Notes: generated by a model not told the origin, from the sequence alone. Numbered from the stretch's first letter, positions 53,501 through 59,500 are shown. The stretch is DNA of 64,000 bases from Lytechinus pictus (GCF_037042905.1 NC_087248.1:11470001-11534000), one strand, 5' to 3'. Translations and numbers: made by a program.

Positions 53501-56500
53501 ATAAGAAAGCTTTGGCTGCTTTGAAATTGAGGTCCCTAAGACTTTGCAAATTTGAAATTGGCAACTGGGTAAGTAATTATGAAAATGGGCAGGGACAACT
53601 TTCTCATAGACCATGTACTTAATTATCAGGGATTTGTGGTTTCCTCTCAAGTACCTATTCTCCTGTGGCTGTAATCTAAATATAACCCTGGTAGCATATT
53701 GTTTTATGTCCTCATGAAAGAAAAATATAATCTGAAGTAAAATTTTTGGGAAAAAAATGACATTTAACCATTATTTGCATTTGCGTACATGGAAGAGTAG
53801 TCCTTGCCTAACATCACTTTGACATCACAAATGTGGTCAATTTGAAGTCTCCATTAGCGATTAACAATTCTTACAACTTTAAAAAAAAATTCATAACTTT
53901 CTTATTGTTTGTCCGATATTGTTCAAACTTTCACCTGTCAACTTGTCTGATTTTTCTTTTTCCTCTGAAAACTAATTTGGGATGGATTCCCCTTTAACCA
54001 GTAACCTCTATTTATGAATTTTACAAAACTTTGCATGAAAAGATGTAACAATTTAGCCATGTCAAAAGGTAAATGGCAGATGTTAAGATGATATCACAAT
54101 TTTTTTTATTGTACTTTTTGCCAGAAATTTTGAAATGAAGAATTCAAATGCTGGTAATGAAAGCCACATGATGTATTGGCTCTTACTGTGCTTAGCGGGG
54201 GATAAGGGTGGGATGGGAATGAGTTTCCAGTCATTCTTCATAAGTGTGTGGTTATTTTTTTTAAACTAAATTATGACTAAAATTAATTGAGCTTATGCTG
54301 TATTTGAGGTAAATTTTATCCATATCTTAGGAAAAGCAGGCCTATCTAGACCCCAAATTAGAAAATCTGATACCATTTGATATTTTAGTCCTCATTCAAG
54401 AAACTGTGATCGGCAATTGTTATTTTTCTCATCCACTTCCAGTACTGGTCATTAACTTTCAATGAAAAAGTGCATATTTGTAAATTTATGCACAAATTGG
54501 CATTCTTCTATTAAGTCAAGTAATGATTATTTATCATGTTGTCCGAAGCAATTGATTATCCATTGTTTGTAAATTATGAAAGAATGAATAGTAAGTGATA
54601 TACATGTAGGACTGTGTGCCAATTTCATTGCAAATGTTAGTTCAATGCCTCCACCTCTTCGATAGGTAATGGACAGGTCAAAATGTAATATAAAGTAAAA
54701 GAACAACAATCATATTAAGGAAAGGCCAGTATTTTCTATTTTAGAAATATGTTTTACCTTGTATCCTTTGTTTTGGAATTGATCTTATAACTTATTATTT
54801 TCTTCTCAGATCACACACTAGTTATCAATATCCGAGTTATGAGACTATAGCAGCTGTTGGATACCACAGTGCAAATTATTATTACCAGTAAGTTTTATCA
54901 GACTAATTCAATTGTCCTTAATAAAGATGACATTGTCTAATTTTGTTTAGAAAAAAAGTCCCTACTGACACATTCAATTCCGTTTAGATGTTATTAACTT
55001 AGCAAAGAGTATGGTAGTCATACCAACCTATGTTGAATTGACAAAAGTGAAAAGATTTTTCGATATATAATTGGTACCCTCCAAATGCTTGAAGCTTATT
55101 AATTGTGGACAATTGTAGAATATGAAATAACAGATTGCTGATGTTGAACCTCAGAAAATTTCATCCTTGCAGAATCAAAATTAAATAACCATAAGAGATA
55201 TAAAAAAGAGATAGAGAGAAAGTGAATGAAATTCGGACAGGGTGATTTTGTTCTTGATGAAAGAGTGATCGTGTTTAACTTTTATACGTTGAAAATCGAT
55301 TCAGGCATGTTCAGGTAAAGGTGCTCTGTCGACGACATTAATGTGTTATTGTTTCATTTTTTTTCTCACTTGTGCATAGTCCAATAGAAGATGAACGATT
55401 CGCCATCCCTACTGGAAAGATGTTCCTTTATGACATGGGAGGACAATATAGGTAAGAATAATTAAAAACCTATAATATTCATAATATTTCTGTTAATACC
55501 TTCAACATACCAAGGATTGGTTTCTGTTTCTTATTTGATAAAGTGCCTATGGATTAGTTACACCTATATGGCACAATATACATTAAAATGATTTTTAGGC
55601 ATTTTATCAGCTGAATTTTGAAATGTGATATGCAACATTTAGTTCAACCTTGCTATATCGCATATTTAAATTTTATTTTGAAATGAAGTACGCATTCATT
55701 TCACAGACAGAGAAGGGGTGACTATAGGCCTTTGCACTTTTTTGAGAAAGAGAATGGAAGAGTGATAAAGAGCAAGAGAGAGAGAGTGTGTGATAGCAAG
55801 TGGGAGAGAGAGAGAGAGGCAGAGGGTGGGAGTGAGGGGGGGGGAGAAAGACAGACAGAGAGAAAAAATGTGAGGAAGATGATGAGGTAATGGGTGTCAC
55901 TTCAATTGCAATCCCTAACACTTGTCATCTCTGATCAACAGGGAAGGAACAACTACCCTAGCAAGAACTTTCTTCTTTGCCAAAGAGTGGTACGAGGATA
56001 ATGAGAACCGCTATGAATACGACCGCACCTATGATCCAGCAACACCGTCCGAATTCCAAAAGGTATACCTATCTCCCTGAAGAAGTCGATATGGGGAGGG
56101 ATGTCGTCCACTTCAGAAAATTCAATCAAATTTTTTGTTTGAAACTATGAGGTGTAGGTTTCAGCATTTAGTTTTACCCTTTTTGGTATAGTTATACAGT
56201 AATGGTCATTTCTTTTCCTATTCTGATTCATACGTTTATATTATTGATTTTCTGTGAAATTGGCATTTGACCCCCTCTTCTTATAAAATTGTTGAATGAA
56301 TAGTTATCATTAAAAATGATTCAATTCATTCATGTTATGTGTTCCTTATTTATCTTTTGGTTGATGCTGTTTGATTTATGGCTACCAATCAGATTACTAT
56401 CATTATTATGATTGGCGGTAAGTAGTGTGTTAATATCAGAAGTGAACTAATAAAAGGATGCAGTGCAAATCCTGTTGGTGAAATTGATCACAGTCATGTA

Positions 56501-59500
56501 TAGGAGATTTCTAAATATATATTTTGTACAATTTTCAAATGATGCCACTTCATGTAAGGATACTTAATATTGTTTTATGTGTTATCTATTCACTTAACAG
56601 GAGGTCTACACTCGCATTGTACTTGGACTTATTGATCTGTCTATGGCCAAATTCCACACAAATGTATATGGTAAATTCATCGTTGATGTCTGGCTTTTTA
56701 TCTTGAGTTTTAATCATTAGCTTCTGCAGTTTGAATTTTACTCCATCAATCTGAAGAAGTGAAATCTGTTCAACGTTGATTAATAATCTGAGCCATGTTG
56801 AGACTAAATTGTTTTGTGATAGACTTACGACACAAACGCTATTTCATTTGTTATTGATATTAGGGGAGGAAATATAAAGCTTCTCATGTTTTATGACTTC
56901 AAATATATGATTTTCAATAGGCCATCCCTCTTGTGTTGGTTTATTGTAATCGGATTCCAGTTATAAACGCGATTTAAAATTTATGTGATATGCATTCCAC
57001 TGGGTGTCTCATTAAGTAGTTTGTAATGCTGTTGGTGAATTTATGAACGAGTCAAAAATGAAGGGCCAATAGGCCCTTTATTTTTAGTAAGCAGAATGTT
57101 TTACCTATAATGTTTGACTGATTTTCAACCTCTGATTTAACTTTTTAAAGAATTAAAACCTTGTATAAACAAAGTGTTAACATCGATGAAAGTTATTTCA
57201 ATACTAAATGATGCAATAAGAGATGTCTGGGGATATTGCTGGGCTTGTCATAGTCTGGTCAATCACAAAGTCACAATAAAACCTTTATTTCATGTGGAAC
57301 CACTTTGATGAACTTTTGGTGGCAGCGGTGGGATCAAAAGTCTTAATATGAAGGATAATACAGAAATTGTCTGAAGTAAGTTACAGGAATTGTCTGAAGT
57401 CTAAATCCATGGACTGCTCTTTGTATTTTGATATAATTTTATAGCATGAGTTTACTTACATGTGATTTCCTAATCTGTGACTTGTGACATAGAGAAGCCA
57501 ACCATATTGCAAGTTTTTTTTAAAACTATGTTCATAGCATTACATTTATGGACAACCCATAGAAAAACTTGTGCCGGCCGCACAGGAACGCTGTTAGCCT
57601 AACATAGCAATAACAGTAAGCCCAGTCACCATCTTTCGGATTGTGAAGTCAAAACATTTATTTCAATGTGTAAGTATGCATTGTTGTAACATTAGGCATC
57701 GCTGCCACGTTACCGGTTGTAACAAGATCTCTGTTAGCGCAAACAACGTTTCTGTGCAGTCAACACAGATTATTTTATGAGACACTGCCCTGTGGATACC
57801 CTTAAGGTTAGTCTTCCCATTGCGTAGAAATGGCCCATAAGTTCCCAAATACTGATGTGATTTTTTTTTCTTTCTTTTCTTGTGCAGGACGTGATCTGGA
57901 TGCCATTGCCCGCCAGTACTTGTGGGACGTGGGTCTGGACTACTTCCATCCGACAGGATACGGTGTGGGACAATATCTCACCCCTCATGAAGGTACAGTA
58001 CATTGAAGATATGGCAACATGATTTCATTTTAAGTAGAGAGTAAAATGTGAAAATATAGTAGGTACAAAGAGAAAAGAATGACCAATAATTGAAAATAAA
58101 CTTTTTGGTAGATTTCACCTTCATTTCATCACTTCTTTGCAGCTATCTGACCTGGTGGGTGTTTCATATAAAAGCTGTTCGTAAATTACGAGCCACTTTA
58201 TGAATGACTGGAACTTAATCAACCCTATTGTTAAATTTTGGTGCACGTTATTTACCACAAGATTTGTATTGTCAGTCATAACTTACGGACAGCTTTATGA
58301 GACAACCATGTTTGCAGGAAAGTTACATTATGATAACTTTGCCATCTGATGACAACAACCATAGTAATTAAACAGCCAATCAAAACTGAGGATTCAATTG
58401 AAGTAAACAGTTTTTGACGTTTCATGCACTGGGTCGAGTTTTATTTCATTTGAGCAGCAAATCAAATCAGTACAAAGTCAAAAATCGATTTTGATTATAA
58501 ATTGTCAGTGCATGGTTTGCCTCTTACAGGTCCTGTTTACATCAATTCGGAATTCATGGTCGACGAACAGCCATTCAACCGTAGCATGTTTATTTCTGCA
58601 GGTATTTATATTTTTGTATATAATTATAAATAATTTATTTGACAAATGAATATATTCCTATAGATGGAAAGGTAGATAAATGGCATCTATTATAATATAA
58701 TCCAATTGGTAGCCTATAGCTGACTTTCATTCATTTGTCTTATTCATTGAGAGATTGATTGATTCATTTGTTTGTTTATTAAGGTATTTGTTTTTTGTTG
58801 ATTACTTTGTAAATATTATATCTTATAATCTTGATAACTACCAATGGGAGGGAATCAATTGGATTTAGAATAATGGGTTTATCACCTCAATAGGGGATGT
58901 AAAAGAAGAACAATATCAATATCAGGGATAAAATGGGAGAGAATAAAAAGTTGAAGTAGAGAAATATACATGTATAATACATGTTATTTATTTATTGATT
59001 CATTTATTTATTTATTTATTTATTTATTTATTCATTCATTCATTTAATTAGGAATCAATTAATTCATTTTAATTATAATTATTAAGCTTTTCTTCAAAAA
59101 ATCTTTCCATCATTGTTTTTTTTTTCATTGATAGGTCCCGGTTATTACTATCGTGATCCTGACGGTGACAGGGAAAGTGACTTTGGTGCTCGTGTCACAA
59201 ATGTTCTCTATGCCAAACCTGTCCCACGAACACCAGTAAGATTTTTTATTGTATTCCACTCTTCTTTTTTTTTTCTCTCTCTAACACCACTAAGATCCTG
59301 AAATCCATTTCAATTCATACTTTATCTCTCTTTACATGTATCATTTAATCTGCCTGNNNNNNNNNNNNNNNNNNNNNNNNNNNNNNNNNNNNNNNNNNNN
59401 NNNNNNNNNNNNNNNNNNNNNNNNNNNNNNNNNNNNNNNNNNNNNNNNNNNNNNNNNNNNNNNNNNNNNNNNNNNNNNNNNNNNNNNNNNNNNNNNNNNN

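What the first reader, a model, noticed from the sequence alone, without database searches (positions are those of the whole stretch)
54810..59235. Intact aminopeptidase P homologue that has lost four of five metal ligands (surface pseudopeptidase)
Seen, after splicing and compared with canonical M24B motifs: DSGGQY to DMGGQY (Asp kept); GTTDITRT to GTTTLART (Asp>Thr); HGTGHG to HPTGYG (His>Tyr); EPGYY to GPGYY (Glu>Gly); RIEN to RVTN (Glu>Thr). The substrate-binding HY motif is also altered (SANYYYH). The 23-exon frame has no stops or frameshifts. Established: the D/D/H/E/E set binds the two Mn ions needed for catalysis. Inference: a maintained non-catalytic paralogue, possibly a peptide-binding receptor, adhesion or matrix protein.
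Basis: partly seen in the sequence, partly recalled or inferred. Interest (0 to 1): 0.72.

Follow-up and report, generated by a model that had tools for sequence, protein, structure and literature searches.

The report
Catalytically dead membrane aminopeptidase P paralogue
A sea-urchin gene copied from the cell-surface enzyme aminopeptidase P has lost four of its five metal-binding residues, yet it is transcribed, correctly spliced and kept under purifying selection, as is a second copy next door, so it is a maintained non-catalytic "pseudo-enzyme" whose job is unknown.

Summary
I aligned it with E. coli PepP, 92 bacterial three-domain aminopeptidases P and the genome's two canonical paralogues. 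That alignment gives D260 kept, D271>Thr, H354>Tyr, E383>Gly, E406>Thr and H243>Tyr.

The gene is not decaying:
- 825 codons stay open over 22 exons.
- 9 of 11 exonic RNA variants are synonymous.
- One exon from another urchin differs by 9 synonymous codon changes against 1 replacement.
- A tandem paralogue 8.6 kb downstream (773 aa, signal peptide, GPI-like tail) has the same losses. It is 54% identical, with saturated synonymous sites.
- The pair branches from the GPI-tailed XPNPEP2-like gene on the same chromosome, after a long stem branch.

I read it as a surface pseudo-aminopeptidase P. What it binds is inferred, not shown.

Caveats:
- The start codon of the window copy is unresolved.
- No full-length orthologue could be fetched and no structure predicted.
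- The tissue of expression is unknown.

This is a new variant of a known kind. The scan had not followed this locus up before.

The parts
38046..38174 (+). First coding exon seen (hydrophobic signal-like segment, then RDCSP). Its 5' limit is uncertain and it has no in-frame ATG. The ATG at 38041, matching the sister copy's start, is one base out of frame.
   Evidence: homologous to exon 1 of copy B
42980..43093 (+). Exon 2 (N-terminal domain; YIIPGYDAHG)
   Evidence: same intron phase in copies B and C
43595..43658 (+). Exon 3
44511..44636 (+). Exon 4 (contains the conserved ectodomain Cys in IDCNW)
45096..45239 (+). Exon 5
46381..46635 (+). Exon 6, enlarged by about 29 codons relative to copies B and C
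   Evidence: 83%-identical open fragment P0001 from another urchin assembly
47736..47876 (+). Exon 7 (Creatinase_N_2 region)
48225..48306 (+). Exon 8 (LFNLRGEDIPYNP; Creatinase_N_2 above the Pfam cut-off)
   Evidence: PF16189, 34.5 bits, E 2.7e-8
48970..49067 (+). Exon 9
50748..50905 (+). Exon 10
51697..51783 (+). Exon 11 (end of Creatinase_N_2, start of the catalytic domain)
52546..52611 (+). Exon 12
53259..53329 (+). Exon 13. Its last 30 bases are read as the loose end joined to 54810 in RNA contigs.
   Evidence: (table 7)
54810..54887 (+). Exon 14. The substrate-binding His (PepP H243) is replaced by Tyr at 54880-54882.
55380..55451 (+). Exon 15. The only surviving metal ligand, Asp at 55432-55434 (PepP D260).
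55942..56062 (+). Exon 16. Ligand Asp>Thr at 55955-55957 (PepP D271), followed by an acidic, Tyr-rich insertion of about 20 residues.
56601..56670 (+). Exon 17
57888..57992 (+). Exon 18. HPTGYG: His at 57947-57949 is kept (PepP H350), ligand His>Tyr at 57959-57961 (H354), and His at 57986-57988 is kept (H361).
   Evidence: the motif is kept in fragments P0004 and P0005 from other assemblies
58530..58601 (+). Exon 19. Its last base starts the split Gly codon that replaces ligand Glu (PepP E383).
59135..59235 (+). Exon 20. GPGYY, a 7-residue insertion, and RVTN with ligand Glu>Thr at 59197-59199 (PepP E406).
59834..59950 (+). Exon 21 (first half of Peptidase_M24_C)
   Evidence: PF16188, E 3.8e-6
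60476..60682 (+). Exon 22. Second half of Peptidase_M24_C, small residues (GGAS), a polar spacer, a 16-residue hydrophobic tail (GPI-attachment-type signal) and the stop codon.

Best explanation
The window holds one of two tandem sea-urchin genes for a catalytically dead descendant of membrane-bound aminopeptidase P (XPNPEP2 type, MEROPS family M24B).

Shown:
- It keeps the three-domain aminopeptidase P architecture and 42 of 58 universally invariant residues.
- All four ligands of metal site A and two of the three ligands of site B are replaced, and so is the substrate-binding His243 equivalent.
- Both copies have stayed open and constrained long after the loss.

Inferred:
- The protein enters the secretory pathway and is held on the outer membrane face by a GPI anchor, like its parent enzyme.
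- It cannot bind the two Mn/Zn ions, so it cannot hydrolyse Xaa-Pro bonds.
- It acts by binding rather than cutting. Several cleft residues survive: the equivalents of PepP H350 and H361, the Arg of the R-I-E motif, and PGYY. New acidic, tyrosine-rich insertions sit next to the former active site. From this I infer that it holds N-terminal Xaa-Pro peptides or a protein partner at the cell surface without cleaving them.

History: the XPNPEP2-like gene on the same chromosome was duplicated, the new copy changed rapidly and lost the metal centre, and it was then duplicated in tandem.
For: - Expression and splicing. All nine junctions are GT..AG, the reads are strand-specific, and a 2582-nt contig matches with 0 mismatches.
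- Ligand mapping. D260 is kept; D271>T/S, H354>Y, E383>G, E406>T and H243>Y in copies A and B. The same columns are invariant in 92 bacterial proteins and in paralogues C and D.
- Established knowledge, as cited in PMC10377022: site A uses D, H, E, E and site B uses D, D, E. Mutating D260, D271 or H243 in E. coli APP abolishes activity.
- Architecture: PF16189, PF00557 and PF16188 match exon pieces. End-to-end BLASTP against bacterial three-domain APPs gives E 8e-68 for A and 5e-81 for B. Intron phases are shared with the canonical paralogue.
- Selection: A and B are 54% identical, with pN 0.29 against a saturated pS of 0.84. Nine of 11 exonic variants are synonymous. The cross-species exon shows 9 synonymous codon changes against 1 replacement, with introns far more diverged. 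A keeps 42 and B keeps 44 of 58 invariant columns, although 5 of the 8 active-site residues are gone.
- Origin: the tree is (D,(C,(A,B))) with 100% support, and the stem leading to A+B is 1.17 substitutions per site.
- Surface features: GPI-type tails in A, B and C; four Cys columns shared by A, B and C, one of which (the Cys of the DCNW motif) is visibly absent from cytosolic-type D; a signal peptide in B.
Against: - No binding partner, localisation, metal content or activity was measured.
- The window copy has no in-frame start codon in its first recognisable exon. The ATG that matches the sister copy's start is out of frame by one base. The only upstream exon candidate I found has no support. 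Its signal peptide is therefore unproven.
- The surviving cleft residues may be kept for structural reasons alone.
- The pseudo lineage evolves about 3.5 times faster than the canonical copy, so constraint is relaxed, though not absent.
- Cross-species evidence covers only two exons, taken from fragments of two other assemblies.
- No 3D model could be made.
Confidence: 0.6

Rival explanations
1. Regulatory subunit. The dead copy pairs with the active membrane aminopeptidase P (or with its own sister copy) through the conserved dimer interface, and so tunes, localises or blocks the enzyme rather than binding substrates itself.
For: Aminopeptidases P act as dimers. The C. elegans pseudo-APP domain of PID-5 interacts with the active APP-1, and heterodimerisation is the favoured model there (PMC10377022, read). 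The active XPNPEP2-like gene is retained on the same chromosome. The C-terminal M24_C region is among the best conserved parts of A and B.
Against: No interaction or co-expression was tested. The long stem branch and several insertions may have altered the interface. Two dead copies seem more than a simple regulator needs.
Confidence: 0.2
2. New enzyme. The pita-bread fold has been re-tooled for a metal-independent reaction, as in creatinase, so the protein is not a pseudo-enzyme at all.
For: Creatinase is a metal-free hydrolase with the same fold (established knowledge). The replacement residues are nearly identical in the two old paralogues (Y, T/S, Y, G, T), which suggests selection for those particular residues. 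H350, H361 and D260 are retained.
Against: There is no positive evidence for any activity. Retaining a few cleft residues is equally expected for a binding protein. No creatinase-type residues were identified.
Confidence: 0.08
3. Transcribed relic. The window copy is on its way to becoming a pseudogene (start codon lost), and only its sister copy is functional.
For: In the reference, the ATG homologous to copy B's start is out of frame, and the exon has no in-frame ATG. The hydrophobic N-terminal segment is weaker than in B.
Against: 825 codons remain open over 22 exons. Nine of 11 current variants are synonymous. Exons 6 and 18 are conserved and open in other urchins. Splicing is clean and the depth is steady. 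The canonical paralogue also lacks an ATG in the equivalent exon, so an upstream start exon is likely for both. The RNA contig extends 220 nt upstream of the exon-1 donor.
Confidence: 0.07
4. Artefact of the exon model. Other exons or isoforms restore the ligands.
For: None found.
Against: RNA shows a single set of junctions in four runs. The canonical protein hits each exon once only in 36000-64000. The sister copy has the same substitutions.
Confidence: 0.01

Closest known systems
Membrane-bound aminopeptidase P (XPNPEP2, MEROPS M24B), represented here by the canonical paralogue at G000:C4:13.52-13.55 Mb
   Same: Three-domain architecture, shared intron phases, four shared ectodomain cysteines, a GPI-type C-terminal tail, the same chromosome, and 39-42% identity.
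   Different: Four of five metal ligands and the H243 equivalent are replaced. There are insertions in exons 6, 16, 20 and 21. The lineage evolves about 3.5 times faster.
C. elegans PID-5 aminopeptidase-P-related domain ('pseudo-APP')
   Same: An animal APP homologue with a conserved fold and mutated metal ligands, predicted to be inactive. Binding without cleavage, or pairing with the active APP, is proposed (PMC10377022).
   Different: PID-5 derives from cytosolic APP-1, is fused to an eTudor domain, works in germ granules and may still bind one metal. The urchin proteins derive from the membrane type, stand alone, carry secretory and GPI features, and keep only one ligand.
Spt16 N-terminal domain, Shulin N1/N2 domains and Ebp1/PA2G4
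   Same: Non-catalytic pita-bread (aminopeptidase-like) domains reused for protein binding (bioRxiv 10.1101/2020.09.04.282897; PMC3888471).
   Different: These are intracellular, ancient and far more diverged. They are not derived from XPNPEP2 and are not GPI-tailed.
Creatinase
   Same: A pita-bread fold without the dinuclear metal centre (established knowledge).
   Different: It is a true metal-free enzyme of bacteria with two domains. No evidence links the urchin proteins to that chemistry.
Surface pseudo-peptidases of other families (DPP6/DPP10, transferrin receptor)
   Same: The concept: a cell-surface protein that keeps a peptidase fold, has lost catalysis and acts by binding (my own knowledge, not tested here).
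   Different: Unrelated folds and families.

Membership tests
Aminopeptidase P, three-domain XPNPEP1/2 type (MEROPS M24B) | Architecture of N-terminal domain, Creatinase_N_2, Peptidase_M24 and Peptidase_M24_C | tested here: met
   Pfam on exon pieces: PF16189 (E 2.7e-8, above the cut-off), PF00557 (E 0.0057), PF16188 in two adjacent halves (E 3.8e-6 and 3.4e-6). End-to-end BLASTP to 594-649 aa bacterial APPs, E 8e-68.
Aminopeptidase P, three-domain XPNPEP1/2 type (MEROPS M24B) | Five carboxylate/imidazole ligands of the dinuclear metal centre (PepP D260, D271, H354, E383, E406) | tested here: not met
   Only D260 is present; the others are T, Y, G and T. The gene is therefore a homologue of the family, not a peptidase member.
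Aminopeptidase P, three-domain XPNPEP1/2 type (MEROPS M24B) | Substrate and proton-shuttle histidines (PepP H243, H350, H361) | tested here: inconclusive
   H243>Y; H350 and H361 are kept.
Aminopeptidase P, three-domain XPNPEP1/2 type (MEROPS M24B) | Hydrolysis of N-terminal Xaa-Pro bonds | not testable with these tools
   Needs recombinant protein.
Membrane (GPI-anchored) aminopeptidase P, XPNPEP2 type | Closest kinship to the membrane-type paralogue rather than the cytosolic one | tested here: met
   ML tree (D,(C,(A,B))) with 100/99-100 support.
Membrane (GPI-anchored) aminopeptidase P, XPNPEP2 type | C-terminal GPI-attachment signal (small residues, polar spacer, hydrophobic tail at the very end) | tested here: inconclusive
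   The pattern is present by eye, with hydropathy 2.7 over 15 residues at the C-terminus. No dedicated predictor or experiment was available.
Membrane (GPI-anchored) aminopeptidase P, XPNPEP2 type | N-terminal signal peptide | tested here: inconclusive
   Clear in copy B. The window copy has the hydrophobic segment but no in-frame ATG in that exon.
Pseudo-enzyme (maintained non-catalytic homologue) | Expressed, with an intact reading frame | tested here: met
   Stranded RNA-seq and spliced contigs; 825 open codons. The start codon is unresolved.
Pseudo-enzyme (maintained non-catalytic homologue) | Purifying selection after loss of the catalytic residues | tested here: met
   as given in the summary.

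The most novel reading that the evidence does not exclude
The two proteins are a new class of GPI-anchored receptor or decoy for proline-containing signalling peptides. The old Xaa-Pro cleft recognises the peptide, and the acidic, tyrosine-rich insertion (possibly sulfated) adds a second binding surface. Alternatively, they have gained a metal-independent catalytic activity in the old cleft, as creatinase has.
Probability: 0.12. Interest if true: 0.7.

Novelty: new variant of a known kind. Interest (0 to 1): 0.42.

Why it matters
Dead enzymes that are kept by selection usually mark a second, binding-based function of a fold. For aminopeptidase P, the non-catalytic relatives found in the literature searched here are intracellular (PID-5, Spt16, Shulin). 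In the papers searched I found no report of a pseudo-enzyme descended from the membrane form.

A surface protein that may still recognise Xaa-Pro N-termini without cutting them could protect, present or sense proline-containing peptides in an animal with rich peptide signalling. It would also give a natural "substrate-trap" version of an enzyme that is of medical interest as the bradykinin-degrading XPNPEP2.

In practice, genome annotation by homology is likely to label both genes as active Xaa-Pro aminopeptidases, and that label would be wrong.

Tried and rejected
- Whole-library profile search with exon 6. It returned only a 127-aa fragment from another urchin plus two unrelated repeat proteins. 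Exon 6 turned out to be the most lineage-specific exon, so it was a poor query.
- The search for homologous proteins with the open frames around exons 18, 20 and 16. Only exon 18 gave hits, two fragments. Full-length annotated orthologues lie outside the length window of exon-sized queries. These blanks say nothing about absence.
- Bacterial scaffold. I fetched a full-length bacterial three-domain APP and aligned all exon peptides to it, hoping to build a long profile query. MAFFT scrambled the fragments, so alignment A2 was not used.
- Contigs carrying P0001 and P0005 gave no DNA. Only L135 could be used.
- PDB searches with exons 16 and 20 alone found nothing meaningful. The E 0.78 hit to Shulin is at chance level.
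- Upstream start exon. The only candidate with a good donor, 36539-36654, has no counterpart near copies B or C.
- Steps left out. Structure prediction, complex prediction, and cluster or contig look-ups of the full protein were not run. The spliced protein has no reference, and long sequences may not be typed.
- Rfam and tRNA scans of the highly represented intronic stretch found nothing. It is a dispersed repeat.
- dS between A and B, and between each of them and C, is saturated, so no numerical dN/dS is given.
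Full report
**What is there**

The window is G000:C4:11470001-11534000 of an 812-Mb genome.

I laid two Logan RNA-like contig sets and two stranded RNA-seq runs of the same species on 54750-60700. The coverage is exon-shaped, and the first mates lie on the minus strand, which in most stranded libraries means an RNA from the + strand. Nine exons are joined by GT..AG introns at 54887/55380, 55451/55942, 56062/56601, 56670/57888, 57992/58530, 58601/59135, 59235/59834 and 59950/60476. 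One 2582-nt contig matches all of them without a mismatch. No alternative junction inside the gene was seen.

The His of SANYYYH comes from CA|T, and the Gly that replaces the Glu of EPGYY comes from G|GT. Both junctions are therefore confirmed.

**The whole gene**

I extended the model upstream using conservation with a sister copy and phase-consistent GT/AG sites. This gives 22 coding exons from 38046 to the stop at 60680-60682, with 825 open codons.

- Exon pieces match Creatinase_N_2 (PF16189, one exon above the cut-off), Peptidase_M24 (PF00557) and both halves of Peptidase_M24_C (PF16188).
- The assembled protein aligns end to end with 594-649 aa bacterial three-domain aminopeptidases P, E 8e-68.
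- The last exon ends in small residues, a polar spacer and a 16-residue hydrophobic tail, the pattern of a GPI-attachment signal.

**Ligand mapping**

Exon 18 aligns to human XPNPEP1 (PDB 3ctz, residues 468-495, E 8e-7). HGTGHG there reads HPTGYG here.

I also aligned four sets together: the window protein (A), its sister (B), the genome's two canonical paralogues (C and D), and either E. coli PepP or 92 bacterial homologues. Using mature E. coli numbering, the result is:

| PepP residue | Role | Copy A / copy B |
|---|---|---|
| D260 | metal ligand | D / D |
| D271 | metal ligand | T / S |
| H354 | metal ligand | Y / Y |
| E383 | metal ligand | G / G |
| E406 | metal ligand | T / T |
| H243 | substrate binding | Y / Y |
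| H350 | cleft | H / H |
| H361 | cleft | H / H |

All eight columns are invariant in the 92 bacterial proteins and in C and D. The three histidines of the HGTGHG...VHE block were part of the pattern I used to fetch the bacterial sequences, so their invariance among the bacteria comes from that selection. The other five columns are independent.

According to the literature read (PMC10377022), metal site A uses D, H, E, E and site B uses D, D, E. Mutating D260, D271 or H243 in the E. coli enzyme abolishes activity. Here site A has lost all four ligands and site B keeps one of three. A metal-dependent peptidase activity can be ruled out with high confidence.

**Relatives in the same genome**

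A search of the genome with exon 18 finds exactly four loci.

- **Copy B** lies 8.6 kb downstream of A's stop, just past the window's end, on the same strand. I modelled it with the same 21 intron phases. It is an open 773-codon frame with an ATG, a clear signal peptide, the same five replacements and a GPI-type tail.
- **Copy C** (C4, about 2 Mb away) keeps every catalytic residue and has a GPI-type tail, so it is XPNPEP2-like.
- **Copy D** (C12) keeps every catalytic residue and ends without a tail, so it is XPNPEP1-like.

A, B and C share four cysteine columns. At the one I compared with D, the DCNW motif, cytosolic-type D has no cysteine. This fits an extracellular life for A and B.

A maximum-likelihood tree gives (D,(C,(A,B))) with full support. 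The stem to A+B is long (1.17 substitutions per site), while the terminal branches are 0.47 and 0.39, against 0.45 for C. The most economical history has three steps: duplication of the membrane-type gene, a burst of change that removed the metal centre, then a tandem duplication.

**Is it maintained?**

Four independent lines say yes.

1. A and B are 54% identical in protein. Their synonymous sites are saturated (pS 0.84) while pN is 0.29, and both frames are still open.
2. Eleven exonic differences separate the reference from the RNA-seq animals. Nine are synonymous. The two replacements lie in the poorly conserved last exon.
3. A Logan contig from another urchin carries exon 18 with 11 of 105 bases changed. 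Of the 10 codons that differ, nine are synonymous and one is a replacement. The flanking intron is 27% different and soon becomes unalignable. HPTGYG is kept there and in a second fragment. Exon 6 is open and 83% identical, with an in-frame indel, in another assembly.
4. Of 58 columns that are invariant across bacteria and both canonical paralogues, A keeps 42 and B keeps 44, although overall identity to bacteria is only 26-30%. Five of the eight active-site columns are among the losses.

So the fold is conserved and the loss is aimed at the catalytic centre. The replacement residues are almost the same in two paralogues that have diverged at 46% of positions. That hints the new residues themselves are selected.

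**How it most likely works**

- Shown: an expressed, constrained protein of aminopeptidase P fold without a metal centre.
- Inferred from sequence features and from the parent enzyme: secretory routing and a GPI anchor.
- Inferred more weakly: a binding function that uses the old cleft. Surviving residues include the equivalents of H350 and H361, the Arg of R-I-E, and PGYY.
- Both copies also carry an insertion right after the lost D271. It is acidic and tyrosine-rich and about 20 residues long in A, and 12 in B. Both carry a 7-residue insertion between the two lost glutamates. In a secreted protein an acidic Tyr cluster is a typical sulfation and protein-contact motif. That is my own knowledge, not tested here.

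I commit to a non-hydrolytic binder of Xaa-Pro peptides or of a protein partner as the most likely mechanism. A regulatory partner of the active enzyme is second, following the PID-5 precedent. A metal-free new enzyme is a distant third.

**Open problem: the 5' end of the window copy**

- The first recognisable exon is homologous to B's ATG-bearing exon, but the corresponding ATG (38041) is one base out of frame. The frame has a stop about 40 bases upstream of 38046.
- The RNA contig extends 220 nt upstream of that exon's donor. Either a further 5' exon supplies the start, or the 5' UTR is unspliced and the start is damaged.
- The canonical copy C also lacks an ATG in the equivalent exon.

**Comparison with what is known**

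Non-catalytic aminopeptidase-P-like domains are known: C. elegans PID-5 (PMC10377022), Spt16 and Shulin, and Ebp1. All of them are intracellular. Searches for aminopeptidase P together with pseudoenzyme, sea urchin, Strongylocentrotus or non-peptidase homologue found nothing on a membrane-type dead copy.

The finding is therefore a new variant of a known kind. It is a homologue of family M24B but fails the family's defining catalytic feature. It is a solid, moderately interesting case rather than a surprise, since pseudo-enzymes are common in large enzyme families.

Noticed in passing
G000:C4:11539313-11558726 (loci L001-L003), just beyond the window's end: Tandem sister gene, 22 exons and 773 codons, with an ATG and signal peptide, the same five active-site replacements and a GPI-type tail. 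Its expression was not checked.
   Followed up: partly
window 38000-38060: The ATG matching the sister copy's start codon is one base out of frame with the conserved coding frame, and an in-frame stop lies just upstream. This could be an undetected upstream exon, a polymorphism or assembly error, or a damaged start.
   Followed up: partly
window 57560-57745 (intron 17): A dispersed repeat of about 170 bp. The genome search gave 570 first-look candidates, and the 40 scored were 87-91% identical. It has very high RNA depth on both strands with many different flanks, and no Rfam or tRNA match, so it is probably a SINE or MITE carried in many transcripts.
   Followed up: partly
window 46670-47041 and 63744-64000; also 37400-37830: Long low-complexity tracts that read as Ser-, His-, Asp- or Val-rich open frames. 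They lie in an intron, downstream of the gene and upstream of it. Similar tracts flank the sister copy, so part of the flanks was duplicated with the gene.
   Followed up: no
G000:C20:2437830-2442164: Two Peptidase_M24 matches 4 kb apart, each inside an open frame of about 390 aa with no intron (best E 2.7e-23). This is a different, possibly intron-poor M24 gene that I did not examine.
   Followed up: no
locus D, G000:C12:2692596-2692739: In the cytosolic-type paralogue, the two exons corresponding to exons 14 and 15 of the membrane-type genes are fused into one. This intron difference separates the two lineages.
   Followed up: no
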